IMG/VR virus record: IMGVR_UViG_3300023278_002893
Coordinates: 233,726 to 297,725 of that record
Direction: 5' to 3' (one strand)
DNA length: 64,000 nucleotides
The stretch's first letter is position 1, and each line of letters begins with the position of its first letter. The notes beneath the pieces are model-generated. The model saw only the letters and a program-made list of their open reading frames with translations, was not told where the DNA came from and did not search any database. Positions 13,800 to 38,919 of this stretch are shown piece by piece. The position numbers were made by a program, and so were the translations under genes.

Positions 13800-14156
13800 A
13801 TGTCCAATGCAGTAAAGACCACGATCAAGAAGTTTTCGTTCACGAAGTGGATCAGTGAGATCGAAGGTTCGGGTGCTCGCGTACTCGGATTCTGTGAGAT
13901 GACGGTCTGCGTCGATGGTCTGGAGTTCACGTTCAGTGACCTGAAGGTTCGCGTGAATCAGAAGGGTGAGCATCACCTGTGCGCACCGAGTCGTCGCTAC
14001 AAGAACTCCGAAGGTGCCTGGAGGACGTCGAGCGCGTACAAGTTCGACAATTCGACGTATGCTGCTCTGCGCAGTTTCGTCTACGGTCGCGACGAAGTGA
14101 AGGTCGCGATCGACGAAGCCGCGGATCTCGAAAAGGAGATTCCGCTGAGCGCGTAG
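13800..14156 (+). CDS. SpoVG-like nucleic-acid-binding protein #1
   Basis: AGGAGG RBS; VLGFCEMTV...FSDLKV...HHLCAPSRRYKNSEGAWR resembles the SpoVG pattern DIRVI...LFVAMPSK...GEFRD. Confidence 0.7.
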   Translation: MSNAVKTTIKKFSFTKWISEIEGSGARVLGFCEMTVCVDGLEFTFSDLKVRVNQKGEHHLCAPSRRYKNSEGAWRTSSAYKFDNSTYAALRSFVYGRDEVKVAIDEAADLEKEIPLSA

Positions 14157-14771
14157 TACATAGCAGTACCTCTAAGTAGGGGTACTGCTAGTCCCACCCC
14201 ACCGCTTCCCGGGGGGTGGGACCTCGCTCTCTTTCTGCTATCACGCGTGCTCATTGAGAAATGAAGGACTCTGATGAGTCCTCCTTTATTGACGTTCGCT
14301 TCGCTCTCTCTCAGTTCCTCCGCTTCGCTCCCCCCTTCGCTATAGTCTCCGCATTCTCTGGATGCGGTTACTATTATAAGAGACCCTCTAACGAGGAGTC
14401 TCTTTTTTTATTGACGCGCGCTGTTGCTCGGTGGATTCGTTCGGTACTGTTCATTCGGTGGTTGATTCGTTTACTCTCATTTGTTAGGGCACCACCCCAG
14501 TAGACGAAACTAATTACGGAGATATCAATTCCTTACGGAAACGCTGATTTACTCGTCGTCGCTGTGCTCCTCGTTGTTCCTTCTTTTTTTGATCTTTCAT
14601 CTCGGTGCACCATTCGTAGAGATATCTATGGATGCACGCCCGTCGGATACGTAAGTACTTGCAATACTCCGACAGTGCTTTATCGATACGTCTAGGTAGT
14701 TCCTAGCGGACGAGATGGGAGATCTTTTTTCGCGGCCGCTCAAAAAAGCCTATTACAAGGAGATTAGAAAC

Positions 14772-14903
14772 ATGGAACACATCCTCAAGAAGATGGCTGT
14801 ACCCAACATCTTGCACTGCGCAGAACTAGTGGTTCTGACCATCGTCGTGCATTTGGCCTCAGGATTGGTATTCTTACCATTATTCATCCCGAGGCAAGAA
14901 TAA
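14772..14903 (+). CDS. 43-aa membrane peptide
   Basis: AAGGAG RBS; hydrophobic C-terminal half. Confidence 0.5.
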   Translation: MEHILKKMAVPNILHCAELVVLTIVVHLASGLVFLPLFIPRQE

Positions 14904-15818
14904 ACCCAACCCCGAAGAAGATAGGAGATCAAACCCATGTTCTACACAATACTACTAATGGTACTGAAAGAATACAAGGACAGCAACAATCCATTCACCT
15001 GAGAGACCCCTCAGTTGAGTTAGACCACCCAGGAGGGATGGGACACTGGTAGGTGGTGGTCAGCTTTTACCAGGCGGTGACATCATTTTGCTCGGCGGAC
15101 AAATCAATAGTAATTTCAAATAGATAGAGTAAATATGTAGGGCTCTGACGTTACTACAGTAGGGGGTTTCGCGCGTCCCTGTCCAGGTGACTCATTCATT
15201 AGGAGATCGATCTCTGGGTGAAACCCTTCTGTATTGCTTCTTACGAATTATTCACTATACTCAGAATTTTCACCCGCCGGATAAAACACCCAATATCACC
15301 CTGTACTCAAACTGAATAAGGCTAGAACCCCCCTAGACAAGAAGAACTCCAGTAGTGCCCTCTGTTAGAGCCAATTGTATTACTGCTTTAGCAGATTCAT
15401 TGCAAGCATGGTGATGATTTACCTGTTGTACTCCCAGTATGCCTCTGTATCGATCCATGCTCATCGATCGATGTAGTTGATTTCATTGAGGAATTTAGTG
15501 TAGTGAAATGGTAAATGCCAATAGGTCGATCAAGTGGGTGTGATCGAGTACCCCGTATTAGTTGAATAGGTCGGTCTGTGTTGGTGCTTTGGCACCCCAT
15601 GAGGGGTCTAGGTTGTTCCTTCATTTTGATGTTCTGTGCTCCCATGTGCTTGGTTTCGTTGATGATTGGAGCCGGGGGTGGAGTGTGAGGGGAACGTGTA
15701 GGAGAAGCGAAGTGTGAGCGTCTCAGGTACCACCTGTGAGAGCTAGTGAGTACAGAGGAGAGTTAATCCATTACCGGTTTCTACCGGGAACATGCCTATT
15801 AGAGGCGGGAGAACTATT

Positions 15819-16109
15819 ATGTTGGAGAAGAGACAGCCGAGAGGAAAGACAATAAGATGCTGGAGCAGGAACGGTGAGCCCCTCGATCCCGGTGCAGAAC
15901 TCCACATGGAGCTGTTAAAACTAGAACACGTGTACTGGCGCAATGAGCTGACAGCGTGCGACGATTGCGGCACAGCTATACCCAATCGCGATCTTCGACT
16001 TACTCCATATGGATTGGTATGTGAGGATTGCAGAGAGACCGTCAAGAAGACAAGAATCAACTTGGGTAGGTTTCTACGTAAATGGGAACCTAGCGGAGAG
16101 GCATGCTAG
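15819..16109 (+). CDS. hypothetical Zn-finger protein
   Basis: CDDC...CEDC; start chosen after GGGAG. Confidence 0.6.
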   Translation: MLEKRQPRGKTIRCWSRNGEPLDPGAELHMELLKLEHVYWRNELTACDDCGTAIPNRDLRLTPYGLVCEDCRETVKKTRINLGRFLRKWEPSGEAC

Positions 16110-16167
16110 ACTGTTTTATCCGCCGCTGAAAAATGCCAATAACCCTGGGAGGGGAAAGGAGAGAATC

Positions 16168-16356
16168 ATGGACAGAACACTACTGGAAGCATCTGGACTG
16201 GCCTGTCATCGTAGTACCTGTGAGGAGCAGGCTCAATGGGAAGGCTACGCTGACACCTACAGGCCTATTACAGGAGAGAAGATTGGCTTCATCCTGATAC
16301 GCGTCTGTAACGATCATAAGAAGCTCCTGAATGGAGCGAAGGGAGAATCCTCATGA
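16168..16356 (+). CDS. small Cys/His protein
   Basis: AAGGAG RBS; CHRSTC...CNDH. Confidence 0.6.
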   Translation: MDRTLLEASGLACHRSTCEEQAQWEGYADTYRPITGEKIGFILIRVCNDHKKLLNGAKGESS

Positions 16357-16558
16357 AGGACACCACTACAGGTGATCAGCCGCTGCGTGAGTTGTGCGAA
16401 AGGTTTCGAGCAGCAGTGTAAGGGGGCTCTACCAGATAGACTGTCTGGTATCCCCACTGTGGTCATCCCTAGTCAGGGTGAGCGCAGGATAAAGAACCCC
16501 TAAGCTCCCCTTGGGTTAAACGGGGAGCACCTTTTTACCTTTCACAGAGGAGATCCAA

Positions 16559-16732
16559 ATGAATGAGGAGTTCGTATTCATCGTGGTCGAGGATGTATCC
16601 CCGGCCCCAGATGACCCCAAGAGTGACGTTTCATACTTCGAGACGGAAGAAGAAGCGGACACATACGCTGAAAATGCAGCAGCATCGAACAATGCACGCG
16701 TCTTCGTAGATGCCAGCCTCCTCCGCGAGTAG
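16559..16732 (+). CDS. 57-aa acidic protein
   Basis: GAGGAG RBS; MNEEFVFIVVEDVSPAPDDPKSDVSYFETEEEADTYA... Confidence 0.6.
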   Translation: MNEEFVFIVVEDVSPAPDDPKSDVSYFETEEEADTYAENAAASNNARVFVDASLLRE

Positions 16733-17265
16733 CGGACGAGCTAAAAGAATCTTCGACACCGCGAAATGCGTCAAAGGGTAAGCCTTTCAACCTTACCCGC
16801 GCCACTCGCAAAGAGGTATTAGCACAATGCGTTAATCGTTAGAACCGCACGACCTTGAACAAACAACTGAATAGTACCAAGTGCTAGATGTCTCTGCCAT
16901 GGGACAGGTGGTAATGTCTAGGCAGGCGCGTAACGGAACAGCTGACCGCTAACCTTAAGGTTATGTTATGCCTGACGACTCGTCATACGGTTCATTGCCC
17001 CATTAGAGAGCAAGTTTAACGACGCACGGCAACTTCCTTTAAACAGGACAGTAGCTAGATGCCGGAACCTCTGCTCTCTCAATCTATTCGTAGGGATGGT
17101 TCTGTTTCCTTGCGTTGTTTCTTCGTTTTCTGAATTTTAATTGGGTCGGTTGCCAGCCGTTAAAGGTGTGATAAGGTGTGTATCACGTGGCGAAGATGGA
17201 AGCATCGCCTGATTGATTTTGATTTTGATTTGCGGCTGACAAAATCGGCCAGAGAGGACTAATCA

Positions 17266-17454
17266 ATGGAAAGCAGTAAGCCTCGTTGCACGAGGTGTAA
17301 GAAGCGAAGCAGATGGGGGAATAGCGAGAAATGCCTCATCTGCCTCTCCGACATTCAAGGACTGAGGGATAAACTCATTGGAAGATCCTGCGCGGAAACG
17401 CCGGAGCCTTCTGATACCCAACCCAAGTCTCGCCATTGGCCAGACAATCATTGA
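17266..17454 (+). CDS. small CxxC protein
   Basis: GAGGA RBS; CTRC...CLIC. Confidence 0.55.
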   Translation: MESSKPRCTRCKKRSRWGNSEKCLICLSDIQGLRDKLIGRSCAETPEPSDTQPKSRHWPDNH

Positions 17455-17465
17455 GGAGAATCATC

Positions 17466-18044
17466 ATGTCCAACCCCATCGTATCGAATATCACACTAGC
17501 AACACAAGCAGAGGTCGATGCTTTCAGGGGCACCTCGGTAACGGGGAACCTTACGATCAGCGGGGCTGACATCACGAACCTCGGCCCGCTGTCTTCGGTG
17601 ACCTCGGTCGGAGGAGACCTGTACATCGACAGCAACGACGCACTGACGAATCTCCTCGGGCTGGGCGGCATCACTTCGGTCGGAGGAGACCTGGACATCT
17701 CCGACAACGCCGCGCTGATGAATCTCGACGGGCTGAGCGGCATCACCTCGGTCGGAAGTGACCTGAGGATCGAAACCAACTTCTGGTTGACGAATCTCGA
17801 CGGGCTGGGCGGCATCACTTCGGTCGGAGAAAACCTGTATATCCTTGACAACGACGTGCTGACGAATCTCGACGGTCTGGGCGGCATCACTTCGGTCGGA
17901 GGAGGGCTGGACATCCGCTCCAACGCCGCGCTGATGAATCTCGACGGGCTGAGCGGCATCACTTCTTCGCTCGGAGGAAGCCTCAATATCTCGAATAATG
18001 CGGTCGGTGATAAGATAGCACGACTAAAGAAACTCATTCACTAA
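17466..18044 (+). CDS. receptor-L-domain-like leucine-rich repeat protein with 25-aa (75-bp) tandem repeats
   Basis: GAGGAG RBS; TLATQAEVDAF cap, then LxNLDGLxGITSVGGxLxIxxN repeated about 6 times. Confidence 0.8.
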   Translation: MSNPIVSNITLATQAEVDAFRGTSVTGNLTISGADITNLGPLSSVTSVGGDLYIDSNDALTNLLGLGGITSVGGDLDISDNAALMNLDGLSGITSVGSDLRIETNFWLTNLDGLGGITSVGENLYILDNDVLTNLDGLGGITSVGGGLDIRSNAALMNLDGLSGITSSLGGSLNISNNAVGDKIARLKKLIH

Positions 18045-18055
18045 GGAGAACCATC

Positions 18056-18274
18056 ATGTACGTATGGATCTGTTTTGTATCAACCATCGCCGCCCTCGGG
18101 CTGCTAGCCTTCGTCACAATCATGTGCTACCCGTTCAACCGATCAACTTCCATCCGAGTACTCGCCCGGGCAGAAGAGCCACCACACTGCACCCTCTGTG
18201 CCACCCGTCACTGGGAACTGGACGAAGGATGTCCAGTGAATGCAGAAGACGAGGTCGTCTTCGTTCTGAGTTAG
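18056..18274 (+). CDS. TM protein with small Cys/His motif
   Basis: AAGGAG RBS; N-terminal TM; HCTLCATRH. Confidence 0.65.
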   Translation: MYVWICFVSTIAALGLLAFVTIMCYPFNRSTSIRVLARAEEPPHCTLCATRHWELDEGCPVNAEDEVVFVLS

Positions 18275-18307
18275 ACAATCCCTAGAAGGAGAAATGAGGA
18301 GAGAGAC

Positions 18308-18679
18308 ATGAGTGGATGGCACGGAGACACCGAGCACTCGGGATTCAACCCCGACATAGCCAGCCATGAAGCCAGGTTTGGATCGGCGGTTGGCTGTACC
18401 TGCACCACTGGTAAGTGTGAGATCCACTGCGAGTGCGGCTCACACATCTCCAATCACCCCGAACACGTGCCTAACAGGCACGAGTTCAAGCCGTTGGGAC
18501 ACACTTCCAGCGAATCACTCGGCGAACCAGCAGAAATCACTACCCCACCCGATGAGGAAGTACCTCGCCGGTCAAATCATGCAGCACCTTTCTACTGTGT
18601 CGTGTGCCAAGAGCAACACGAACCAGGTCAGGTGCTGTGCAACAACGTACGTCGATTCGTGGAAGGAGAGTTGAAGTAA
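18308..18679 (+). CDS. Cys/His-rich protein
   Basis: AGGAG RBS; CTC...CEIHCECGSH; CVVC...C. Confidence 0.65.
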   Translation: MSGWHGDTEHSGFNPDIASHEARFGSAVGCTCTTGKCEIHCECGSHISNHPEHVPNRHEFKPLGHTSSESLGEPAEITTPPDEEVPRRSNHAAPFYCVVCQEQHEPGQVLCNNVRRFVEGELK

Positions 18680-19033
18680 CATGCACAGAGAAATACACTT
18701 GAGCACGAAGGAACTCGAATCCATCGTGATGGAACACTATGCTCGTGAAGGTCATGAGCCTCGATTGGTGCGTCTATTTCTGAATCAGCCGAGTTAGTAG
18801 GAGGGGAAGTACTTACCGGTAGGGGTGTAAGTAATCCTCACTGGTGCTTGGTAGTGCCTATCATTACGTTTGCTACCTGTCAGATATACACGAGGGGGGT
18901 TGTCCCCTCGTTTCTCGGGGATCGTCGCTAACGCTCCTCGTTGTTTCCTCACTTTGTGAGGAGCCTCGCTCTCGCTCGGTCGGTGTCACGAGCAAGAGCA
19001 TATATGTAATAGACACCAGGAGAACCATCAAAC

Positions 19034-19603
19034 ATGAGTGAGCAAACAGCCAAAGTTGATCGAACCACGGACAAGTACCGCCGGCAGTGCGAAGCCATCT
19101 GGGAGGATTACGCGCCCCATTCGGTCATCGAGGACTTCGTCGAGTGCATTCGATTCGACCCGAAGTCGACCCTCCTCGGTTTCGTCAATCTCACGATTGG
19201 AATCAAGACCGCATGTGGGCACATCGCGAAGTTCGGGGTGATTGGAATCAAGGTGAAGTGCCTCAATAGAAAGTTCATCCTCGACTTCCCGTCTCAGAAG
19301 TCGAAGACCGACGGCAACTACTACCCGGTCTGCTTTCCGTACACGCCGTGGGAGCGTGACGTGATCACCACCATGGTCATGAACACCGCCAGCGTGCAGG
19401 AAGCGGCGAAGCATGCAGAAGAACAGGCGAAGGCGAACGAAGTCGCGCAAGACACAGCCACACCCGTGGATGCCGTCCATGCCGAGGAGAACCTCTTCGG
19501 AGACGAACTCGATCTCGAACCCGCAACCGAGGTGCCCGCCGACCTGGATCTCTCCGAGGACACGGCAACCGCCGTCGCAAGTGAAAATCCGTTCGAAGCG
19601 TAA
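19034..19603 (+). CDS. SpoVG-like protein #2 with acidic tail
   Basis: LLGFVNLTI...GIKVK...FILDFPSQKSKTDGNYYPVCFP...RDVITTMVM; ends ENPFEA. Confidence 0.75.
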   Translation: MSEQTAKVDRTTDKYRRQCEAIWEDYAPHSVIEDFVECIRFDPKSTLLGFVNLTIGIKTACGHIAKFGVIGIKVKCLNRKFILDFPSQKSKTDGNYYPVCFPYTPWERDVITTMVMNTASVQEAAKHAEEQAKANEVAQDTATPVDAVHAEENLFGDELDLEPATEVPADLDLSEDTATAVASENPFEA

Positions 19604-19625
19604 GCACGACGCTCGGTAAGACTGG

Positions 19626-19655
19626 GGGGACCCCTAACGGGGTCCCCTTCTTTTT
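19626..19655 (+). terminator. intrinsic terminator
   Basis: GGGGACCCC-TAAC-GGGGTCCCC followed by TTCTTTTT. Confidence 0.85.
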
Positions 19656-19889
19656 GGCACCTAACTTTCAACCGGAAGAAGAAAGATGACTCGAAACATT
19701 TCTATCCGCACACTCCTGCTGAAATGGACGTGCGGGCTACACCAGTGGCCGTTTGATCCGCCGCTGAAAAATACCAATCACGAGGAGAACGAGATGAAGG
19801 ATGGGTACATGATTACGAATGGATTCATGAAGTATGGATTCACTTGACTGAGGCGGCCGCGAGAGCTGAAGCGGATAAGGAGTGACACC

Positions 19890-20117
19890 ATGAGTGTAGA
19901 AACGATCGAGTGGTGTCTTGTGATAGCTCTCATCGGCTTCATGGTGTGGGCGGTGTGGTATTGCATGGGCTATCCCAAGAAATGCCAGTATTGCGGAAGG
20001 GACATTCGCTGGTCGGAACGAAAGGATGTATCGGGACTTGCCAACATCATGAGACACAAGATGTGTGCTGATCGATATCGAGCAGAAATCGATATAAAAA
20101 TACGCAAACGATCGTAA
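19890..20117 (+). CDS. TM protein with CxxC motif
   Basis: AAGGAG RBS; TM; CQYC...HKMC. Confidence 0.65.
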   Translation: MSVETIEWCLVIALIGFMVWAVWYCMGYPKKCQYCGRDIRWSERKDVSGLANIMRHKMCADRYRAEIDIKIRKRS

Positions 20118-20131
20118 AGAGGAGGGTAGCC

Positions 20132-20500
20132 ATGAGTGAATGTCTCCGGTCATGTACCAGACTGTTGCGAGAACGAGATACCGTGGTAATACACAGTATT
20201 CTATGCCCCAATCGGGGACTGAAAGGATTCGACATGGTTGAGCCCTCCAGTAGGTGCCCAGAAGGTGTATGGACTATCATGATCTGGGTAGCAAGAGGTA
20301 TGCTTCGACCCGTACCTCTGGCCTTCATTCAAGAGCTGGGTGAGGGGAAATATCAAATAGCCACCAAAGGCATCGACGCCGAGGACATAGCCTTGGAGAT
20401 GCCGGAAGGATTCGAATCGCTAGCAGATCTACCGTCATTCGAAACTCCCGAAGCTGCCGCTGGTGCTCTTGAAGACTTCTACGAAAAGTATCCACCATGA
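20132..20500 (+). CDS. hypothetical protein
   Basis: GGAGG RBS. Confidence 0.6.
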   Translation: MSECLRSCTRLLRERDTVVIHSILCPNRGLKGFDMVEPSSRCPEGVWTIMIWVARGMLRPVPLAFIQELGEGKYQIATKGIDAEDIALEMPEGFESLADLPSFETPEAAAGALEDFYEKYPP

Positions 20501-20706
20501 TTGGAAAATCAACCCGACAACAAGTCAATACCGCCCTTCGAAAGGAAGCGTGGTATATCGTAGCCACGTTAGTAACGCTGTTAGTCGCACTACGCATCAT
20601 CTATTAGGGGATATCCCAGCGTGTGACTCATTCCTTGAATGCGCAAGGGTTGTTGCTTCATTTTGTGAGTTGTAATATTAACCTCCCAGAGTAAGGAGCT
20701 ACTACG

Positions 20707-20961
20707 ATGAATAACGGACAAAACTGTGAAGGAAAGAAGATGATCGCGGGATCTTTTGTTAGACCCCACGTGCTGGTCAAATTCGCCTTCACCTCGAAGC
20801 ACCCCAATGGCAGACCGAACGGGAAAACATTCATCCGGACATTCAAAGCTGACTTCCAACCTTCACGCGTTAGCGAGAAGCAGACGGTAAGTGAGCTGTG
20901 CGCGATGATCAGCGCCCAGCGTCCCGATGGCAAAGTGCTGGAAGTCGTTCGACGGGGATAG
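20707..20961 (+). CDS. hypothetical protein
   Basis: AAGGAG RBS. Confidence 0.65.
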   Translation: MNNGQNCEGKKMIAGSFVRPHVLVKFAFTSKHPNGRPNGKTFIRTFKADFQPSRVSEKQTVSELCAMISAQRPDGKVLEVVRRG

Positions 20962-20998
20962 ACATCCCAACCACACAAGTCAAATGAAGGAAGTCAGT

Positions 20999-21394
20999 AT
21001 GCACCATGTAATGGAGCAGTTCCAAGGTGAGATCTTTGTTGCGGGTATAATTCTCGCGTTCAGTCTCACAGGGGTCGTTGGTATTTACCGAGGACGGATC
21101 GAGCAACTCGTTGCCCGGAAACGACATCGGTATCTACCTCCCAACTCCCGAGTATTGGGGAACGATGGAGTTTATTACAGTCCCATCAACCGAGAGTTGG
21201 GAATACACATGACTATCCTGAGCTTCATGGCCCAAGTGGAGAACGGATTCATCGCTAACGGTGATGGCGAAGGTCGCTACGCCAACGTACTTGAGGAGAC
21301 CAACGTCGTTGTATTGCCATCGGACGTTACTACCTTCGGACGATTAGATCTGAGCTTCACCCACGTGGTGTGGTATCAGAAAGAAGGAAGCTAA
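20999..21394 (+). CDS. membrane-anchored hypothetical protein
   Basis: AAGGAAG RBS; one TM near the N-terminus. Confidence 0.6.
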   Translation: MHHVMEQFQGEIFVAGIILAFSLTGVVGIYRGRIEQLVARKRHRYLPPNSRVLGNDGVYYSPINRELGIHMTILSFMAQVENGFIANGDGEGRYANVLEETNVVVLPSDVTTFGRLDLSFTHVVWYQKEGS

Positions 21395-21397
21395 GAT

Positions 21398-22172: not shown

Positions 22173-22178
22173 GATGAA

Positions 22179-30988: not shown

Positions 30989-31044
30989 TTAGTACCCAGC
31001 TAGTTGGGCCCCTTCCCCGTAAAAGAAGAAAGGAATGCCGTAAG

Positions 31045-31284
31045 ATGCGGAAGATCATAAGAGTAGGGTTGTTGCTTCTGGTTGTGCTGTCATCTACAGC
31101 CCAGAAGTGCGACGATGGAATGTCGGGAGAGTCCCGCCAAGGTAATGCTGTAGGGGTGAAAGATCACTACAAGCAGATAGATAGACCGGTAAGTGCTGTC
31201 CCTGAGCCCTCAGCTTGGATAATGTTTCTGGCCGGGGGAATCATCATCTACAAGTCAGTTGGGAAAAACAAGAAGAAGGAGTAG
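31045..31284 (+). CDS. minimal PEP-CTERM protein
   Basis: Signal-like N-terminus; AVPEPSAWIMFLAGGIIIY-KSVGKNKKKE. Confidence 0.75.
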   Translation: MRKIIRVGLLLLVVLSSTAQKCDDGMSGESRQGNAVGVKDHYKQIDRPVSAVPEPSAWIMFLAGGIIIYKSVGKNKKKE

Positions 31285-31357
31285 CTATGTCCTACTGTGT
31301 AGTAGGTGAAGAATTTCAGTAACAACTTCGCATTGATGACCATCGCGATCGGGGTTA

Positions 31358-31663
31358 TTGCCGCAGCGCAGATGGTCAGCTGTATGCGAGGGAATTGATA
31401 TGCCGGATCCAAAATCCGAAAGTGAGAAGAAACCCTTCAGAGTAGGTGATGTGTGTGAGTACGTGGGCAGTGATGGCCACTGGAGCAAACGTCACATTAT
31501 CGAAGAGTGCAAGGTTCGCGGCCCCGAATTCTTTGAGTATTGCACCTCGCAGGGTGCGTGGATTCCCCACGAGTGCTTGAAACTCACTGAGGAATCCTCG
31601 GTGGAATCCAGAGCAGAGCTTTGGAGATTGATGGTAGAAGAGTGTGAGGAACTTTCTGAGTGA
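31358..31663 (+). CDS. hypothetical protein
   Basis: KPFRVGDVCEY SH3-like start; true start may be ATG 31400. Confidence 0.55.
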   Translation: MPQRRWSAVCEGIDMPDPKSESEKKPFRVGDVCEYVGSDGHWSKRHIIEECKVRGPEFFEYCTSQGAWIPHECLKLTEESSVESRAELWRLMVEECEELSE

Positions 31664-31673
31664 GAGGAGTACC

Positions 31674-32246
31674 ATGAAAGAAATATTCGGGAATCTGTTC
31701 AAATGTGTGAAAGCCGAAGCCATCTGTATTACCACCAATGGATACGTGAAGAAGAACGGTGGTGTGGTAATGGGACGAGGATGTGCGTTGGAAGCAACCA
31801 AGCGTTGGCCCGGGGTTGAGGATCTGGTAGCACACAGCCTGAGTGGGGGTAAGAACGTCCCGACCCTGCTTACCCTGCCGCAGGAGGAGAATCCAAATAT
31901 CACTCTCCTGCCCACGCCAATGGCCAATTACATCGTTCCGTATCACGTCGTGACCTTCCCTGTGAAGCCAATCAGATGTGGTGGAGACCAGTTGTTGCCC
32001 CGTTTTCAGAACGACAACACCAGCAGGACCTCGGTTCATCCAGGGTGGATGAGCCAAGCCAAACCCTCCCTCATCCAGCACTCTGCGAAGCTCCTGGTTG
32101 AGCTGACAGACAAGCATGGGTGGAGTAGTGTCATCATACCCAAGCCGGGATGCGGAGCTGGTGGCCTCGATTGGAAGGATGTCAAGCCTTTGATAGCCGA
32201 CATTCTGGATGACAGGTTCTATCTGATCACTTTTCCAAAGAGGTAA
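31674..32246 (+). CDS. macrodomain (ADP-ribose processing, DarG/Poa1p-like)
   Basis: AICITTNG...MGRGCALEA...VVTFPVK...IPKPGCGAGGLDWKDVKPLI. Confidence 0.85.
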   Translation: MKEIFGNLFKCVKAEAICITTNGYVKKNGGVVMGRGCALEATKRWPGVEDLVAHSLSGGKNVPTLLTLPQEENPNITLLPTPMANYIVPYHVVTFPVKPIRCGGDQLLPRFQNDNTSRTSVHPGWMSQAKPSLIQHSAKLLVELTDKHGWSSVIIPKPGCGAGGLDWKDVKPLIADILDDRFYLITFPKR

Positions 32247-32342
32247 GTAGCAGGCGAGGGAAAATAAGACACACACCCCAGTTAGTAGCCACATAGGATA
32301 CGTGGTCTCAGGAGAGCCCACGTTCTACGAATAGGAGAGGTA

Positions 32343-33569
32343 ATGCCCCAGGTAAAGCTGAACTCAGAACAGAAAGCCGCGCTGGATATCGCGCTCAATA
32401 CCCGTGATCATCTGTTCATCACGGGAGGGCCAGGTACTGGTAAGTCTGTCTTGATGGAGCAAATCATCAGAGGTCTCCGGCGGCAGGGAAAGAGGGTGCG
32501 AGTAGCCGGTCCGACTGGGTTGGCGGCTCTTGCTCTGCGTGGTACTACTCTTGCCCGTTTGTTGGGCACTGGTATTGCTAAGAACACTTCGGAACTGGGT
32601 AGGATGGATATTTCTCGGGCCGAAGAAAATCTACATAAGGTCACTGATCTTATCGTAGATGAGATCAGCATGGTGTCCGGAGACTATCTGAACGTGATGG
32701 ATACCGTAATGAGAGAAGCCACTGGTGAGAAGGAACCCTTCGGAGGAATTCGAATCATCCTCTGCGGTGACTTCCTTCAGCTGCCTCCAGTACATCGACG
32801 TACCGAGCCTGATCCTGAATGGAGATGGGCATTCCAACATCCACTCTTTGCACTGACCAAGAAGATCTCTCTGGTCAAGTCAATGAGACAAGCAGACCCG
32901 CTGGACATCAAGATACTCACCGAGTTGCGTCATGGTATCATCTCCCCTCAGGGCGCTGATGTAATGGCAGACATGGTGGGGCGGCAGCTCAAACTCCCGA
33001 CCGAACTCTATCCCATCAACAAGACAGTGCATGAGATCAACGCCGAGCGATTGGCAGCACTGAAAGGGAAAGAGAAGGTGTATCGAACAGGGTATTCGCC
33101 TGGGAAATACAAGAACGTATTCGTAGATCAGGTTCCCATTGGAGAGAGGGTTGTTCTCAAGGTGGGTGTTCCGGTGATTATTCTAGCGAATAACCCCGCC
33201 CAGAGATACGCCAATGGTTCCCAAGGTGTTGTTGTTTCGATGGATTTTGATCGAGTTCGGGTGAAGCTTTCTGCTAACCGGATGGTCTCGGTTGAGAAGA
33301 AGGTATGGGAAATCACCGATGCGCGAGGTAATCGCATGGGTGAGGTGGAAGGTCTTCCGGTCCATCTCGGATGGGCTGCTACCATTCATCGTGCTCAGGG
33401 TATGACTTTGAACGAGGTGAAGACAGATATATCCAAGTGCTTTGAACCAGGTCAGGCATGTGTTGGTATGTCCAGGACGAGAAGTCTCAGCAACATCTCT
33501 CTCACCGCGCCGGTAACAGAGTTTCAAGTAGATTCAGATGCACTCAAGTTCATGATGAGCATGACATAA
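32343..33569 (+). CDS. PIF1-family SF1B DNA helicase
   Basis: FITGGPGTGKS, LIVDEISMV, FGGIRIILCGDFLQLPPV, MRQ, NGSQG, LGWAATIHRAQGMTL, VGMSRTR. Confidence 0.95.
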   Translation: MPQVKLNSEQKAALDIALNTRDHLFITGGPGTGKSVLMEQIIRGLRRQGKRVRVAGPTGLAALALRGTTLARLLGTGIAKNTSELGRMDISRAEENLHKVTDLIVDEISMVSGDYLNVMDTVMREATGEKEPFGGIRIILCGDFLQLPPVHRRTEPDPEWRWAFQHPLFALTKKISLVKSMRQADPLDIKILTELRHGIISPQGADVMADMVGRQLKLPTELYPINKTVHEINAERLAALKGKEKVYRTGYSPGKYKNVFVDQVPIGERVVLKVGVPVIILANNPAQRYANGSQGVVVSMDFDRVRVKLSANRMVSVEKKVWEITDARGNRMGEVEGLPVHLGWAATIHRAQGMTLNEVKTDISKCFEPGQACVGMSRTRSLSNISLTAPVTEFQVDSDALKFMMSMT

Positions 33570-33578
33570 AGGAGAACC

Positions 33579-33965
33579 ATGAGTATGAAAAGAAATGAAG
33601 GTATTGAGTTCCTGATCGCGCGCGGGCAGACTCGGGAAAATGCCGAGACCTTCATCGACAGCAAGGACATTCAGACCAAGGGTCTCCAACTCCCTCCCGA
33701 ATCAGCCATGGAGGTCATGACGGAACTTACCAAGATGGGCCTACTCGTAGGGCCGGTTCGTTTCTACGTGAAGATCCCCGTCGAACACGAACGTGCCCTG
33801 TTGGGCGCACTCGAAGCCGTCTCGGATGGACCTGTCGCAACCGAGGGTACATTCGATGTAGCGAACATCGGAGAGAATCCGATCGGTGATGAAGCGGCCA
33901 GGCTTGCGGCGGGTTATTCCGGTGATGCCGGATTGGCCGGACTTGACAAGTCGAAGGTGCATTAG
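33579..33965 (+). CDS. hypothetical protein
   Basis: AAGGAG RBS. Confidence 0.7.
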   Translation: MSMKRNEGIEFLIARGQTRENAETFIDSKDIQTKGLQLPPESAMEVMTELTKMGLLVGPVRFYVKIPVEHERALLGALEAVSDGPVATEGTFDVANIGENPIGDEAARLAAGYSGDAGLAGLDKSKVH

Positions 33966-33967
33966 CC

Positions 33968-34633
33968 ATGAGTGTGGTGATGAGACTACTAATCTATGTG
34001 TTCATCGCCATCGGTTTCATTATGAGGTTTCTACCGAAGCGACGAGGTAGAAGAAGGATACCCCAACCCCCTATGTTCGTCGCGGCGAGACATAGATCAA
34101 CACCGCTTCGGCCTATGCGAGTGCCATGGACTGGTTCGACTGCTACGCGAAGATCAGTAGGATACTGCGAACAGACGGATTGCGAAAACTATGCGAAGGG
34201 AGTATTCCTTCTCAACCACGGCCAGCACTTCTACTGCCCTCGATGTCGAGAACCGGGGCGCATGGTGAGGGAGAGGGGTCACTATGAAGGCAGCTCCAAC
34301 GTCTTCAAGGAAGTGCGCTGCGAGTTCAACTACGACCCACTGAATGACAAGTATCGGGAGATTGGAATCGTACGCGACGACAGCCTTTGGGGAGACCACA
34401 ACGTCTATACGTTGCAATCGCCCCTCATCAAGACCGAGAAGCGGGCGCTCAAAGTGGCCGAGGCGATCCTCGCCAACCTCAACCGAGGGGGCGGGGTTGT
34501 ACAGGGAGAAGTACCTCATACCAATGAAGTAATCCTCTCCTTCGACGATTCACCAGAAGATTTCTCTCGTAAGCTCGCTGTGTTGGCGAAAGAATGGGAG
34601 AACAGTTCAATATCACAAGGAAGAAGAGCATGA
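33968..34633 (+). CDS. membrane-anchored Zn-binding protein, paralog of 46438..47196
   Basis: VGYCEQTDC...KGVFL...CPRC...ERG; KTEKRALKVAE; ILSFD. Confidence 0.75.
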   Translation: MSVVMRLLIYVFIAIGFIMRFLPKRRGRRRIPQPPMFVAARHRSTPLRPMRVPWTGSTATRRSVGYCEQTDCENYAKGVFLLNHGQHFYCPRCREPGRMVRERGHYEGSSNVFKEVRCEFNYDPLNDKYREIGIVRDDSLWGDHNVYTLQSPLIKTEKRALKVAEAILANLNRGGGVVQGEVPHTNEVILSFDDSPEDFSRKLAVLAKEWENSSISQGRRA

Positions 34634-34842
34634 GTTTGGTGACCCGTGCCCTGATCTTTGCTGCCGCTCACCACGAGGAGCAGAGGGATCGGGGAGGCAA
34701 TCCCTACATCTGGCATCCAATCCGCGTCGCCCTCTTTCTCCAAAAGAAAGGATATGTAGAGACCTATCAAGCTGTGGCTCTCCTTAGAACTATTCGATCA
34801 GCATCAGAGGATGCGATTGGAAAACAGGTGGCTCCATCGTAG
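34630..34842 (+). pseudogene. truncated RelA/SpoT-type HD hydrolase (Mesh1/SAH-like)
   Basis: RALIFAAAHHEEQRDRGGNPYIWHPIRVA matches the HD_4 N-terminus, but the HDxxED motif is absent after AVALL. Confidence 0.65.
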
Positions 34843-35087
34843 CCAAAAGAGTCTGGCACGTCGAGTAGAAACACTACGCAGCAAAAGCAAACTAAAGCTG
34901 CGCAATCGCGCTACTCGTTGCAGGGCAATCTTCTATAGAAGGAAAAAGAATGGACATCGCCCGAGGTAGAGCATTCGCCTTTGGCCGACGGATGTACCAC
35001 GAGGAGAATACACCATGAGACTTATAGCCGCCTCCTACTCAAGCCTGTATGCTCCTCATCCACAAACTATAACCGAAGGATCGAAAG

Positions 35088-35279
35088 ATGAAAGAGGGAG
35101 ACAAGGTATGGTATTCCATACCGGGCGATGAACCAAGGCAGTGGTCGATCACGAAGATTTGGGATACGAACACCGCAGATGGAATGATTGCCTGCCTCTC
35201 AAGGACGGACAAAAGCAAGAGACTCAAAACAGATAGGTGCAATGCGCCATTAGGAGATATCAGTGTCGAAACGAATTGA
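35088..35279 (+). CDS. small SH3-like hypothetical protein
   Basis: MKEGDKVWY; AAGGA RBS. Confidence 0.55.
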   Translation: MKEGDKVWYSIPGDEPRQWSITKIWDTNTADGMIACLSRTDKSKRLKTDRCNAPLGDISVETN

Positions 35280-35424
35280 GAGAGTTGAGTTATCCAACGG
35301 GTGGTACTTCCTCGTGAAAGAGGAACTCCAGAGTAATCAAGTAAGATAATCCTACTAGAATCTCAAAAAAGAAGTGCTGCTGGGTAGTTTCGCGCGTCGG
35401 TAGCCATTCATTAGGAGGTGTCCT

Positions 35425-35868
35425 ATGATGTTCGTAAATGTCTATAACCAAGACCAGGCATGCGAGTTGGAACCTATCGAAGGCACCGCCATGGTATCCA
35501 TCACCTCACCAGGACAACCTGCCCCCTTGAAGGAGGGTTGGGACCCTCTCCTCCGGGTTGAGTTTCACGATATCGTGATACCCAGAGCTGAGATGCCTGT
35601 GCTAGTAGATCCCATCTCTGGTGGGGTTGTCCTCTTCGATGAAGAAATTGCTGAACAAATCGATGCCTTCTGTTGGAAGCACAAAAGGTTGAACTTCATC
35701 ATACATTGTGCAGCTGGTCAGAGTAGATCAGTAGCTGTTGCTATGTTCCTGAAAGATATTTACAAAGCAGAGGTTATACTCCACGCTGTGAAGACTACCG
35801 CGGGCGCCAATGCGCTAGTCCATCGCACACTGATGAGGAAATACTGGGAGGAAAGACTAACGACATGA
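35425..35868 (+). CDS. protein-tyrosine/dual-specificity phosphatase-like protein
   Basis: IIHCAAGQSRSVAVA (CX5R); MVSITSP...LRVEFHDI. Confidence 0.85.
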   Translation: MMFVNVYNQDQACELEPIEGTAMVSITSPGQPAPLKEGWDPLLRVEFHDIVIPRAEMPVLVDPISGGVVLFDEEIAEQIDAFCWKHKRLNFIIHCAAGQSRSVAVAMFLKDIYKAEVILHAVKTTAGANALVHRTLMRKYWEERLTT

Positions 35869-36251
35869 GAACACAACAAGTGCGACAAAATGCCACCAAT
35901 AACACGGTAAATATACAGGTTATCTCCCTAGATGAGCTAGATCCGGAGCTGATTGCGGTAGATGATCAACTGAACATTCTCATGGTTAATGATCGCGGGC
36001 AACTTGATTGGGAGACAATCGGGATCATGTTTGGTCCCATGGAGGAAGGAGAGATGATTATCCTCGCCGATCGTGATCTGAATTGGCCCAGATTACTTCC
36101 GCGGATCAACACGACCCTTACTCCCAACATCGTAGCTCGACGGCTGAGGGAGGCAAAAGTAGCTTTCGAAATTGAGGAGGGTTGGGACACTTTCAATCTG
36201 AGCCATCCAGAGGGCGCCATTGTAAATCTCTGGAAAAGCCGCAATCCATAA
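35865..36251 (+). CDS. hypothetical protein
   Basis: ATGA overlap with the phosphatase gene. Confidence 0.65.
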   Translation: MRTQQVRQNATNNTVNIQVISLDELDPELIAVDDQLNILMVNDRGQLDWETIGIMFGPMEEGEMIILADRDLNWPRLLPRINTTLTPNIVARRLREAKVAFEIEEGWDTFNLSHPEGAIVNLWKSRNP

Positions 36252-36267
36252 GAATAGGGGTATTATT

Positions 36268-36690
36268 TTGTCAGCTCGACGCGACGCCACCAGAGCGAAA
36301 TGGTACAAGAGAGATCGAATCCTCAACACCCGGGAGCATGTAACCAAGAAGGGACGTATCGCCTGCTTGAGGTGTGAGAAGAAGTTCAACTCCGAGCATA
36401 CGACTAACATTCGCCTCTGTCCAAGATGCAAGGGAAGTGATGATTGGGAAGGAAGTGATGCCTCCCATGCCCAGTTTGGAAGCACCAAATACGAAGGGTT
36501 CAAAATCCCCACTGACGCCGAGCACGCTAAGAAGTTGGGAGTGGAGGCACCGAAAAAGCCGGGTCTTGGAAGAGCAACCCGCAGCTTTCAATTGAAAGCG
36601 TCTAAAGCCCGAGCAGAGCTGAACGATAGGGAGAACTTCTGTCGAGAACAGGCGGGGCTGGATCAGATTTCGATGGATCCTTACGAGTAG
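36268..36690 (+). CDS. Zn-ribbon protein
   Basis: RIACLRCEKKFNSE...NIRLCPRCK. Confidence 0.65.
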   Translation: MSARRDATRAKWYKRDRILNTREHVTKKGRIACLRCEKKFNSEHTTNIRLCPRCKGSDDWEGSDASHAQFGSTKYEGFKIPTDAEHAKKLGVEAPKKPGLGRATRSFQLKASKARAELNDRENFCREQAGLDQISMDPYE

Positions 36691-36760
36691 CCAGGGTAGG
36701 GGGGTTTTTCCTTTGTGAAGGGTGGATTTTAGTTTTTCATCTGAAAAAGGAATCCCTATT

Positions 36761-37168
36761 ATGAGTACGAAGCCTTTTAGTAAAGAAATAGCCGGTCATC
36801 TCTGGGAACTGATGCAAGTGACCACAACGAACCGTCGCTTGCACCCCAAGATGCACGAAGGTAGTGTCTTATTCGTAGGATACGCCGATATGATCCTGTC
36901 AGTTGGAGGGATTGACGTTATTGCCCTTCCGGGGAGTAGCATCAAGTTGATCGGGGATCAGATTCATTTTGATCCTAAGCAGGAAAGGGCCAGAGATGGG
37001 AAGCGTTTCTTCCCAGTTTGGTGTCCTATCCTCGCCGAATCGAGAGCAGTCTTCACAGAGTGCCTCAAGAACGATCCGAAAATCATTGAAATGTGCGACC
37101 ATGCCGTTGCCCAGGTGACTCCCGGAACGGCGGCCGCAAACGAAAACCCAAACCCCTTTTTTGGATAA
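36761..37168 (+). CDS. SpoVG-like protein #3 (most divergent)
   Basis: FVGYADMIL...IALPGSSIKL...FDPKQERARDGKRFFPVWCPI..ESRAVFTECL; ends ENPNPFFG. Confidence 0.55.
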   Translation: MSTKPFSKEIAGHLWELMQVTTTNRRLHPKMHEGSVLFVGYADMILSVGGIDVIALPGSSIKLIGDQIHFDPKQERARDGKRFFPVWCPILAESRAVFTECLKNDPKIIEMCDHAVAQVTPGTAAANENPNPFFG

Positions 37169-37195
37169 AGGGTAGTAAGGAGAGTTGGTAATAAA

Positions 37196-37717
37196 ATGGG
37201 TACCAAAAACTTGGTTCTTGGCGTAGTTGTCTTCGCATACTTGGCGGCGATCGTGGTCCCACTCACCCTCTTTGCGACGTCGCACGCAAGGGCCGAAGAA
37301 ACACCTCAGACATACCATCATTACGTTTCGGAATCGGGAACCCTTTCCTTCACCAACAATGTGGATCGTATCCCCGCGGCGTATAAAGACGCTGCCGTGG
37401 TGAAAAAGTTCGATCCTACGGTTCCCAACCCCCGACACACTCCGGGCGAGGTTTATGAATTTGTGCCGGCGCGTGAACGGTTGAAAGCACGCCTTGATCT
37501 TCTTCAATCTGCGGCTTCGGATCAATCCACGTACAGGGCGGCAGATCCGTGTGCCGGATCAGTGACCGTGCGTCAAGAAAGACGTGATTACCGAGAAAGG
37601 GGGCAACAGCGCAACAGCCTCTTTTACGTTGTGGTCGACCACTGCGGGAACGAAAGATCCGCAACAAGATCAGATCCGAGAGCGCTTATCGTTCCGGGGC
37701 ATCCCGATATTAAGTAA
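37196..37717 (+). CDS. exported DUF4124-like protein
   Basis: Signal/TM, then YHHYVSESGTLSFTNNVDRIPAAYK. Confidence 0.65.
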   Translation: MGTKNLVLGVVVFAYLAAIVVPLTLFATSHARAEETPQTYHHYVSESGTLSFTNNVDRIPAAYKDAAVVKKFDPTVPNPRHTPGEVYEFVPARERLKARLDLLQSAASDQSTYRAADPCAGSVTVRQERRDYRERGQQRNSLFYVVVDHCGNERSATRSDPRALIVPGHPDIK

Positions 37718-37779
37718 ACGGATATCGGAGGCTGCCTCATCCGGGGCAGCTCGCCCGGTTCCCATTCCAGGAGTCATTC

Positions 37780-38280
37780 GTGTCCGGCGAAGATGAAGTT
37801 AGTGGTAAATTGATTCAGCTGAATGTCCATCCAAAGTATCGGGATCCCAGCGCTGATGAACCTCTCAACTTTGACCTCGCACTATCCGAAGAAGAACAGC
37901 GGGATCTCGATGACTTCATGTCGGGAGAGGTGGTGGACTTAGATCTACCCGAGCTGAATGAACCGAGCGCAGCCTGCTACCAAGGAATAGGGAACAGCGC
38001 CTGCTACCTTTGCGTACACTGCGAAGATACTCGGCGATGGTGGGAAAGAATACGCACCACTCTTACCAAAGACTTCGTCTGCACAGCAACCCGACTGGAG
38101 GCCACACGTCATCCCGTCAGCGGAGAAAAAAAATACCTGGAAAGAGTAAGGGGAGCACTCGGCTGGGTAGATGCATTGGTAGATGTCCCACATCAGCTTT
38201 GTCAGGCACTAAATCCGGATGGACATTGTCCTGAGTTTCTTTTGAGTCTCCCAAAGAGCAGGCGATCCGAGAAGGAATAA
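37780..38280 (+). CDS. Cys-rich hypothetical protein
   Basis: AGGAG RBS before GTG; CYLCVHC...C...CQALNPDGHCPEF. Confidence 0.7.
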   Translation: MSGEDEVSGKLIQLNVHPKYRDPSADEPLNFDLALSEEEQRDLDDFMSGEVVDLDLPELNEPSAACYQGIGNSACYLCVHCEDTRRWWERIRTTLTKDFVCTATRLEATRHPVSGEKKYLERVRGALGWVDALVDVPHQLCQALNPDGHCPEFLLSLPKSRRSEKE

Positions 38281-38415
38281 CTAAGGTTGTTTCTTCATTT
38301 GTTGATCACATTTCTGAGTGCGTTACATGGACGCACTGAGAAAGAATCCACTAGGGATTCTTTTCATACCGAGGATATCTTAGGATATTCTCTCAAGAGC
38401 ACGTAGGAGATATCA

Positions 38416-38919
38416 GTGAACACTGCTGACCGGAAGTTTGAATTGAGAACATCGTCCCGCAGAAATGGCATCACTGCCGTTCTCGCCGAGGGTTTGGAAA
38501 TGACAGTCACCGTCATTGGATTGACGGATCCCCGTCGGTTGACTCGGAACGAACATGCATATGCCGTTCTGGACATCAATACCGGTTTGGTTCCAATTCG
38601 TGTGCGAGACATCAAGCTCGTGTTCAGTCCGAACAAGAAACGGCTCATCGTCAAGTGGCGGAAGTGGAAGACGGGTTTCAGGCGGGGCGACTGCGACGAG
38701 TGGCTCGACATCGCCGGCCCGCCGAAGCAGGAAGACAGAGAGGCTCTCGATGAGATAATCATTGCGGTCTACAAGCAGATCGTTCAGGAGAGCGAGAACG
38801 GAACGTTGGGGCAGAACAACCTCGACAAGCTGGAAGAGCTGAGAGCCTCCCTGGAAGCGGATAGTTCGGACTCGGCGCCCGCCGGCGATCCCGATACCGA
38901 AGCGGAGCAGAGCGCGTAA
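38416..38919 (+). CDS. SpoVG-like protein #4 with acidic tail
   Basis: HAYAVLDI...IRVRDIKLV...LIVKW...EWLDIAGP.KQEDREALDEIIIAVYKQ. Confidence 0.7.
   Translation: MNTADRKFELRTSSRRNGITAVLAEGLEMTVTVIGLTDPRRLTRNEHAYAVLDINTGLVPIRVRDIKLVFSPNKKRLIVKWRKWKTGFRRGDCDEWLDIAGPPKQEDREALDEIIIAVYKQIVQESENGTLGQNNLDKLEELRASLEADSSDSAPAGDPDTEAEQSA

What the first reader, a model, noticed from the sequence alone, without database searches (positions are those of the whole stretch)
13800..38919. Four highly divergent SpoVG-like paralogs in one phage
Seen: ORFs at 13800, 19034, 36761 and 38416 each show a SpoVG-like pattern (beta strands, then a P-S/Q-K-x-x-DG-x-(Y/F/W)-type loop, then a pre-helix P and a terminal helix). 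Most have acidic tails and GC-rich codons, and two follow the shared box. Established: SpoVG is a DNA/RNA-binding regulator of Firmicutes, spirochaetes and deltaproteobacteria, related in fold to PC4/Whirly ssDNA binders. Inference: an expanded family used as ssDNA/RNA chaperones, hetero-oligomers or dominant-negative decoys of host SpoVG. I know of no description of such an expansion, but could not search.
Basis: partly seen in the sequence, partly recalled or inferred. Interest (0 to 1): 0.8.

Follow-up and report, generated by a model that had tools for sequence, protein, structure and literature searches.

The report
Four SpoVG-fold genes, SSB-like tails
An uncultured jumbo phage carries four very different copies of the SpoVG nucleic-acid-binding fold in its DNA-replication region; two of them end in the same short tail motif as the phage's own single-strand DNA-binding protein, so they may be SSB-like helper proteins, not sporulation regulators.

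Summary
The ORFs at 13800 (A), 19034 (B), 36761 (C) and 38416 (D) are real genes with a SpoVG-like domain. None reaches Pfam's cut-off. Support comes from profile-profile comparison with true PF04026 proteins (B 98.6%, C 96.1%, D plus its orthologue 93.2%, A 73.8%, with A linked to B at 96.9%) and from predicted structures of A, C and D. No fifth copy was found in the window. Only the last 64 kb of a 298-kb contig was searched.

They are not a recent expansion. Each belongs to a separate, deeply diverged phage subfamily. Related metagenomic phages keep the same gene order: A-type just after the strand switch, B-type about 3 kb downstream of another SpoVG-like gene, and C–D–SSB after a PIF1 helicase.

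New here: B, C and 16 of 40 outside relatives carry a disordered tail ending in NPF, or in DEIPF, the canonical bacterial SSB tip. The phage's OB-fold SSB has the same NPF motif. B, D and that SSB also share an upstream box. A, B, D and the SSB have among the most GC3-rich codon usage in the window.

Best reading (moderate confidence): abundant single-strand nucleic-acid binders that dock on the SSB's partners. The PC4/Whirly link and the host-SpoVG decoy idea found no support.

The parts
13800..14156 (+). Paralog A, 118 aa (ATG 13800; an alternative TTG lies at 13782). A-type SpoVG-like protein and the first + strand gene after the strand switch. Short tail ending EIPLSA.
   Evidence: Outside-only HMM 4e-35. 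Five homologues at 54-62% identity. ESM Atlas model TM 0.64 to a PF04026 cluster. hhalign A-family vs B-family 96.9%, vs true SpoVG 73.8%. Its positional orthologue P0024 in L004 ends in DEIPF.
19034..19603 (+). Paralog B, 189 aa: N-terminal helix, SpoVG core (about residues 40-135) and a 54-residue acidic tail (19439-19600) ending NPFEA.
   Evidence: Pfam SpoVG E=0.0033. hhalign B-family vs true SpoVG 98.6%, E 9e-16. 15 relatives at 26-40% identity. Tail net charge -16. GC3 0.74, rank 3 of 87.
19586..19594 (+). Codons for the NPF tip of B
18940..18959 (+). Shared box upstream of B, perfect match to GTTGTTTCYTCAYTTKKTGA
   Evidence: 9 matches in the window, all on the + strand, 0.06 expected
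19624..19649 (+). Strong intrinsic-terminator-like hairpin (11 pairs, 8 G-C, T-run) just after B. Box, gene and terminator make B look like a one-gene transcription unit.
36761..37168 (+). Paralog C, 135 aa (ATG 36761; an alternative GTG lies at 36722). C-type SpoVG-like protein ending NPNPFFG.
   Evidence: Outside-only HMM 3e-29. ESM Atlas TM 0.52/0.72 to a PF04026 cluster. hhalign C vs B 99.5%, vs true SpoVG 96.1%. NPF codons at 37151-37159.
38416..38919 (+). Paralog D, 167 aa (GTG start after AGGAG). D-type SpoVG-like protein with a longer basic loop (WRKWKTGFRRGD) and an acidic tail without an NPF tip.
   Evidence: Pfam SpoVG 0.034 and NCBIfam SpoVG 0.031 are the sole hits. AF2 model pLDDT 73.5; the top 10 PDB Foldseek hits are all SpoVG chains. 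D plus its orthologue in L010 vs true SpoVG: 93.2%, E 2.8e-7. The N-terminus is conserved in the orthologue, which supports the GTG start.
38286..38305 (+). Shared box upstream of D, perfect match. With its left flank (38271-38305) it is nearly identical to the element upstream of the SSB gene.
39555..39574 (+). Shared box upstream of the OB-fold SSB gene (1 mismatch)
39668..40198 (+). OB-fold SSB (PF00436) with a disordered tail containing NPF (40163-40171), followed by a strong terminator at 40235-40270. It has the highest GC3 in the window (0.80).
   Evidence: Its orthologue in L010 also has NPF in the tail.
13747..13769 (+). Partial box upstream of A: GTTGTT followed by a 6-bp hairpin
   Evidence: Weak, because only the first six bases match the box.
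32343..33569 (+). PIF1-like helicase, a context gene. The order PIF1, C-type, D-type, SSB is conserved in L010.

Best explanation
Shown: A, B, C and D are four real genes for small proteins built on the SpoVG fold (a beta-sheet, a basic loop and a C-terminal helix). Bacterial proteins with this fold bind dsDNA, ssDNA and RNA. The four belong to four anciently separated phage subfamilies that travel together in a clade of large uncultured phages, inside the early/middle DNA-metabolism region (clamp loader, UDG, NDK, PIF1 helicase, two OB-fold SSBs, an Mre11/SbcD-like phosphoesterase). Inferred: they are abundant nucleic-acid-coating or chaperoning proteins, not catalytic or host-sporulation factors. 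B and C are built like an SSB: a binding core, a disordered and (in B) strongly acidic linker, and a conserved C-terminal NPF tip. The phage's own OB-fold SSB carries the same tip, and some relatives have the canonical bacterial SSB tip DEIPF instead. So B and C most likely bind single-stranded nucleic acid and dock on the same partner protein(s) as the SSB tail, either bringing those partners to particular substrates or competing with SSB for them. A and D share the core and the expression signature but have other tails, so they probably have other partners or substrates.
For: Fold and homology.
Real, conserved genes with conserved order: L004 has clamp loader/DeoC/NDK/UDG, then an A-type gene. 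L005 and L014 each have two SpoVG-like genes 3 kb apart. L010 has PIF1, then C-type, D-type and SSB.
Tail: 16 of 40 outside relatives end in NPF or DEIPF. Among 907 six-frame ORFs of the window and related loci, NPF within the last 15 residues occurs only in five SpoVG-like proteins, the SSB and one antisense ORF. The SSB orthologue in L010 keeps NPF in its tail.
Co-regulation and abundance signature: B, D and the SSB share the upstream box. B and the SSB each look like box-gene-terminator units. SSB, B, D and A rank 1, 3, 6 and 7 of 87 ORFs for GC3.
Known biochemistry: SpoVG binds DNA through two basic residues and the helix (PMC3688583) and binds RNA, ssDNA and dsDNA (PMC11086051). The last residues of the SSB tail are its partner-docking site (PMC7913777, abstract listed).
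SpoVG domains also occur fused to LPD26 polyvalent-protein modules in Bacillota proteins, and the Atlas structure search also returned a VirD4-family coupling protein (TM 0.53-0.54). These proteins may belong to conjugative elements, which handle transferred ssDNA; that link is my inference, not a tool result.
Against: No binding, expression or interaction data exist; no sequencing runs could be listed. None of the four passes Pfam's curated threshold. D's model was built from an alignment of family members, which may bias it towards the family fold. B has no usable structure model (single-sequence AF2 pLDDT 43). NPF is only three residues and no partner is identified. The C-type orthologue in L010 lacks the tip, so it is not essential to the subfamily. 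Canonical SpoVG proteins act as gene regulators, which would equally explain several paralogs with different helices. Treating high GC3 as a sign of high expression is an assumption.
Confidence: 0.45

Rival explanations
1. The four are sequence-specific gene regulators, like bacterial SpoVG. Each paralog uses its own recognition helix to bind particular phage DNA or mRNA sites (possibly the shared box) and so times the phage programme.
For: Canonical SpoVG proteins are site-specific DNA/RNA-binding regulators whose helix sets specificity. The helices of A-D differ strongly. A is the first gene of the + strand block. A 20-nt box recurs 9 times upstream of genes in the same block.
Against: A long acidic linker with an SSB-type tip is not a known feature of such regulators. 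The codon usage and the stand-alone promoter-terminator units resemble those of the SSB, not what I would expect of a low-copy regulator. Synteny is with replication and recombination genes.
Confidence: 0.25
2. They are decoys aimed at the host. Either they are tail mimics that soak up host proteins that normally dock on host SSB (nucleases, helicases, repair factors), or they are non-OB substitutes that let the phage avoid defence systems that sense phage SSB.
For: Two relatives carry the canonical bacterial tip DEIPF. A defence system triggered by phage SSB has been reported (DRT4 preprint listed).
Against: Most tips are NPF, which the phage's own SSB shares. That suggests a phage-encoded partner. 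The phage still encodes two OB-fold SSBs. Host and partner are unknown.
Confidence: 0.12
3. One reading: dominant-negative partners or hetero-oligomers of the host's SpoVG that reprogramme host physiology such as sporulation or septation.
For: The fold is shared. Phage-borne spoVG has been discussed as a possible sporulation-related post-transcriptional regulator (PMC10294663).
Against: Identity to true SpoVG is about 12-19%. The subfamilies are phage-specific and absent from PHROGs. The host is unknown. The conserved neighbours are replication genes, not host-takeover genes.
Confidence: 0.06
4. The resemblance is chance, or the ORFs are not genes.
For: All direct Pfam scores are below the gathering threshold.
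Against: Independent relatives in many metagenomes, conserved gene order, significant profile-profile matches, and structure searches that return only SpoVG.
Confidence: 0.02

Closest known systems
Bacterial SpoVG (Pfam PF04026; structures 2i9x, 2i9z, 2ia9)
   Same: Same fold and same motif order: strand, basic loop with DG, aromatic, Pro, then a helix starting near a conserved Arg. The size of the core domain is similar.
   Different: Only about 12-19% identity and below Pfam's threshold. B and C add an N-terminal helix with a conserved Trp. Long disordered tails with NPF tips are present. D has a 5-residue loop insertion. A lacks the pre-helix Pro. The genes sit in a phage replication module, not in a yabJ-spoVG-type host operon.
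Annotated single-copy phage SpoVG proteins (e.g. Clostridium phage phiCP7R I3PV27; uncultured Caudovirales A0A6J5NS67)
   Same: SpoVG fold encoded by a phage. They are the best BFVD structural matches of the D model. Their function is unknown.
   Different: Those phages are reported with one copy that Pfam recognises. Here four mutually unrecognisable subfamilies coexist, none is in PHROGs, and two carry SSB-type tips.
Bacterial and phage OB-fold SSBs (E. coli SSB with its ...DDDIPF tip; T7 gp2.5 with an acidic C-terminal tail)
   Same: The architecture: a nucleic-acid-binding core, a disordered acidic linker and a short conserved aromatic tip. The tip motif is shared with the phage's own PF00436 SSB. 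The promoter box and codon bias are also shared.
   Different: The core is not an OB fold, so these are not members of the SSB family. ssDNA binding is untested.
PC4/Whirly-type ssDNA binders (including the PC4-like protein of phage T5; recalled from memory, not tested here)
   Same: Small beta-sheet-plus-helix proteins that bind single strands. There is a possible functional analogy.
   Different: No structural or sequence link was detected here. No PC4 or Whirly entry appears among the 50 listed PDB matches.

Membership tests
SpoVG family (PF04026) | Score above Pfam's gathering threshold (29.6 bits) | tested here: not met
   B 18.0 bits, D 14.7 bits, A and C no hit. NCBIfam SpoVG gives only D, at 14.4 bits against a 108-bit cut-off.
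SpoVG family (PF04026) | Remote homology to proteins that do pass the threshold (P0045 at 55 bits, P0032 at 156 bits) | tested here: met
   hhalign: B 98.6% (E 9e-16), C 96.1% (4e-9), D plus its orthologue 93.2% (2.8e-7), A 73.8% (3e-5) with A-B at 96.9%. A profile of the four retrieved P0045 and P0032 at E<1e-3 among 1.84 billion proteins. The expanded profile hits only SpoVG structures in the PDB at E<=0.002; the next match has E=1.
SpoVG family (PF04026) | SpoVG fold, as in 2i9z and 2ia9 | tested here: met
   D: AF2 pLDDT 73.5; the top 10 PDB hits are all SpoVG, probability 0.89-1.0, TM by target 0.54-0.63. A: Atlas TM 0.64. C: Atlas TM 0.52/0.72. B was not modelled usefully and rests on sequence profiles.
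SpoVG family (PF04026) | Two adjacent basic residues needed for DNA binding (K50/R51 of S. aureus SpoVG; PMC3688583) | tested here: inconclusive
   Aligned positions: A has SRR (kept), D has RK in WRKWK (kept), B has SQK (one kept), and in C the register is ambiguous (PKQERAR). The true family member P0045 has SEK.
SpoVG family (PF04026) | Conserved Pro before the helix (Pro63 of B. subtilis SpoVG, as cited in PMC3362512) | tested here: inconclusive
   Present in B, C and D; absent in A and all A-type relatives, which have Y/F-x-F instead.
SpoVG family (PF04026) | Binding of DNA or RNA; dimer or oligomer formation | not testable with these tools
   Needs purified protein.
SSB family (PF00436, OB fold) | OB-fold core | tested here: not met
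   No PF00436 hit for A-D, and the cores are SpoVG-like. The window's true SSBs are at 39668 and 47212.
SSB family (PF00436, OB fold) | Disordered acidic linker plus a conserved C-terminal aromatic tip used for partner docking | tested here: met
   Met for B and C: an NPF tip, shared with the phage SSB and with 14 relatives, and DEIPF in 2 more. B's tail has net charge -16. A (EIPLSA) and D (acidic, no tip) meet this only partly.
PC4/Whirly superfamily | Structural similarity to PC4 or Whirly domains | tested here: not met
   None among the 50 listed PDB Foldseek matches of the D model. Only the D model was tested.

The most novel reading that the evidence does not exclude
SpoVG-fold proteins with SSB-type C-terminal tips form an unrecognised, non-OB class of phage single-strand-binding or mediator proteins. 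They plug into the same interaction hub as the phage SSB. Large phages keep a fixed set of several specialised versions (A, B, C and D types) in their replication module.
Probability: 0.3. Interest if true: 0.75.

Novelty: new variant of a known kind. Interest (0 to 1): 0.6.

Why it matters
What SpoVG does mechanistically is still debated (DNA or RNA binder). Phage spoVG genes have been read as 'sporulation' auxiliary genes. This locus suggests another reading: in a clade of large uncultured phages, the fold is a multi-copy, probably abundant component of the replication/recombination module, and two subfamilies carry the SSB's own docking motif. If confirmed, this would add a new structural class to the phage SSB-like proteins. 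It would give a testable partner-recruitment motif (NPF). It would also assign about 40 sequence clusters of viral 'dark matter', absent from PHROGs, to a fold and a likely role.

Tried and rejected
1. Single-sequence searches were uninformative. PHROGs gave nothing for the four proteins and one match among 45 relatives. phmmer against the PDB gave nothing relevant. tblastn and megablast against GenBank phages gave nothing. The word-indexed homologue search found only self for B and D.
2. AF2 of B without an alignment failed (pLDDT 43), so B has no structural test.
3. The small 9-sequence profile A2 did not reach the SpoVG structures in the PDB. Only the 45-sequence profile did, and that profile contains some true SpoVG-like members.
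With B or the A-type alignment it returned only the source contig, a sister contig and one 2.6-kb metagenome contig.
5. I tested whether the shared box is a conserved hairpin. Only 4 of 24 + strand GTTGTT sites are followed by a clean stem, so I treat it as a sequence box.
6. An internal ATG at 38500 as the start of D was rejected, because the upstream residues are conserved in the L010 orthologue and the GTG has the better ribosome-binding site.
7. A search for a fifth paralog in the window with four different HMMs found none.
8. No sequencing runs were listed for expression evidence.
9. The SSB's relatives in cultured phages are too distant to compare tails.
Full report
**What is there**

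The window is the last 64 kb of a 297,725-bp viral contig, IMGVR_UViG_3300023278_002893. A 196,567-bp sister contig from the same sample carries identical copies of A and B. No cultured phage is close at the DNA or protein level.

The four ORFs are on the + strand, and each follows a Shine-Dalgarno-like sequence:
- A: 13800-14156, 118 aa
- B: 19034-19603, 189 aa
- C: 36761-37168, 135 aa
- D: 38416-38919, 167 aa

**Is the SpoVG resemblance real?**

Direct searches are weak. Pfam gives SpoVG as the only hit for B (E=0.0033, 18 bits) and D (E=0.034), both below the 29.6-bit threshold. It gives nothing for A and C. PHROGs gives nothing relevant. Within the window only B and C recognise each other by BLAST (26% identity, E about 0.004).

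Deeper searches settle the question:
- A profile of the four cores plus A's five homologues, run against 1.84 billion representative proteins, found 45 proteins at E<1e-3. Ten of them match PF04026. Two are clear family members: P0045 at 55 bits and P0032, with two SpoVG domains, at 156 bits.
- The 45-sequence profile matches only the three solved SpoVG structures in the PDB at E<=0.002 (E 1.4e-4 to 2e-3); the next match has E=1.
- An HMM built only from outside sequences picks exactly the four genes out of 397 window ORFs: A 4e-35, B 1e-30, C 3e-29, D 0.007, next 1.5.
- Profile-profile comparison against the true SpoVG set gives B 98.6%, C 96.1%, A 73.8% (and A against B 96.9%), and D alone 72.6%.
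- D then gained an orthologue in a related phage (L010 12470-13093; phmmer 1.7e-22). The two together score 93.2%, E 2.8e-7, against true SpoVG. That orthologue independently gives PF04026 as its only Pfam hit (E=0.012).

Structure agrees with this:
- The ESM Atlas models of A and C superpose on PF04026 clusters (TM 0.64 and 0.52/0.72).
- An AF2 model of D (pLDDT 73.5) has SpoVG chains as its ten best PDB matches (probability 0.89-1.0). The next match drops to probability 0.15.
- D's best viral matches are annotated phage SpoVG proteins.
- B has no usable model.

Four different HMMs found no fifth copy in the window. The other 234 kb of the genome was not available.

**Not a recent expansion**

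The four fall into separate subfamilies, each with its own relatives in unrelated metagenomes. D is closer to canonical SpoVG than to A, B or C.

Related contigs keep the same layout:
- L004 (an 88-kb contig) has clamp loader, DeoC, NDK and UDG on one strand, then an A-type gene as the first gene on the other strand. The window has the same arrangement.
- L005/L006 and L014 each have two SpoVG-like genes about 3 kb apart, the downstream one B-type.
- L010 has PIF1 helicase, then C-type, D-type and SSB. This matches window positions 32343, 36761, 38416 and 39668.
- A small siphovirus-like contig, L013, has a single copy.

So the set is an old, conserved feature of a clade of large phages. The superfamily is essentially missing from PHROGs.

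**The tails**

- Of 40 outside relatives, 14 have NPF within their last 15 residues (at or within a few residues of the C-terminus), and 2 end in DEIPF, the canonical bacterial SSB tip.
- B ends ...ENPFEA after a 54-residue tail of net charge -16. C ends ...NPNPFFG.
- The window's OB-fold SSB (39668-40198, PF00436) has ...GDNPFGEADAATA. Its orthologue in L010 has ...GGNPFTPDG....
- Among 907 six-frame ORFs of the window and seven related loci, NPF within the last 15 residues occurs only in five SpoVG-like proteins, the SSB and one antisense ORF.
- The end of the SSB tail is the known docking site for SSB's partners (PMC7913777, abstract listed).
- A-type proteins instead end in an acidic-hydrophobic-x-hydrophobic-small-Ala pattern, and one of them (P0024) ends in DEIPF. 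D has an acidic tail without a tip.

**Expression signature**

A 20-nt box, GTTGTTTCYTCAYTTKKTGA, occurs 9 times, all on the + strand between 12.5 and 39.6 kb (0.06 expected). B and D have perfect copies upstream. The SSB has a one-mismatch copy. The D and SSB copies share about 15 further bases on the left.

B and the SSB are each followed directly by a strong terminator-like hairpin.

For third-position GC, the SSB, B, D and A rank 1, 3, 6 and 7 of 87 ORFs, at 0.80, 0.74, 0.70 and 0.69 against a median of 0.52. Two other box-preceded genes rank 4 and 5. C is ordinary at 0.55. I read this as one co-regulated, probably highly expressed class. That reading is an inference.

**Mechanism**

Bacterial SpoVG binds DNA through two adjacent basic residues and its helix (PMC3688583). 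It also binds RNA, ssDNA and dsDNA with limited dependence on sequence or structure (PMC11086051). The basic pair is kept in A and D and partly in B.

Four lines of evidence bear on function: the replication-module context, the SSB-like architecture, the shared tip, and the shared expression signature. From these, the best-supported model is that these are abundant single-strand nucleic-acid binders. B and C would use the SSB's docking motif to bring, or compete for, the same partners.

The rivals are:
- sequence-specific regulators of the phage programme;
- decoys of the host SSB interaction network, or a way to evade SSB-sensing defence;
- decoys of host SpoVG, which is the least supported.

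The fold assignment is secure (about 0.9). The functional model is moderate (about 0.45).

**Comparison with what is known**

Single phage spoVG homologues are annotated and have been discussed as possible sporulation-related genes, with no function shown. I found no description of several divergent SpoVG-fold genes in one phage, or of SSB-type tips on them. That search covers only the open-access library.

**Verdict**

This is a new variant of a known kind, of moderate to high interest because of the SSB-tail connection.

Noticed in passing
window 12486-39574 (+), nine sites listed: The box GTTGTTTCYTCAYTTKKTGA marks a class of + strand genes. The genes just downstream include five of the seven most GC3-rich ORFs in the window (12580, 17436, B, D, SSB). 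The D and SSB copies share an extended element, GAAGGAATAACTARGGTTGTTTCTTCA. It was not found in the related loci L004 and L005.
   Followed up: partly
window 41048-63466 (+): Fifteen tRNA genes (Gln x2, Leu x2, Arg x3, Thr, Lys, Met x2, Asp, Glu x2, Ser) lie scattered among small ORFs, as in many jumbo phages.
   Followed up: no
window 12580-13059 (+): A Cys-rich 159-aa ORF preceded by a box copy, with GC3 0.73, ends in ...GCIPF. This may be another SSB-tip-like ending. It has no Pfam hit.
   Followed up: partly
A-type relatives P0003-P0015, P0030, P0033, P0034; window 14100-14153: A-type proteins end in a recurring acidic-hydrophobic-x-hydrophobic-[S/A]-A pattern (EIPLSA, ELVLAS, IEIAA, AEVSA and others). 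This could be a partner-binding strand or a degradation signal. It is unexplained.
   Followed up: no
window 39668-40198 and 47212-47613 (+): There are two OB-fold SSB paralogs. The first has a long tail with NPF and extreme GC3. The second is tail-less with ordinary codon usage.
   Followed up: partly
window 17436-18044 (+): A 202-aa protein made of leucine-rich-type repeats (ITSVGGDL...) follows a box copy. A long antisense ORF (17375-18037) mirrors it and is probably spurious.
   Followed up: no
window 11000-13800: The strand-switch region between the minus-strand replication genes and the plus-strand block has raised GC (0.57) and many G+C-rich hairpins, with few convincing ORFs. It might hold an origin or non-coding RNAs.
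   Followed up: no
L013 5380-5718: A contig of about 30 kb with SPP1-type portal and terminase genes carries one SpoVG-like gene of the 'other' subtype just upstream of the packaging genes. So the superfamily is not confined to jumbo phages.
   Followed up: partly
L005 3687-4115: The public gene call there is on the minus strand (142 aa). The + strand ORF 3720-4061 is a clear SpoVG-like protein (E 2e-24), so the deposited call is probably on the wrong strand.
   Followed up: yes
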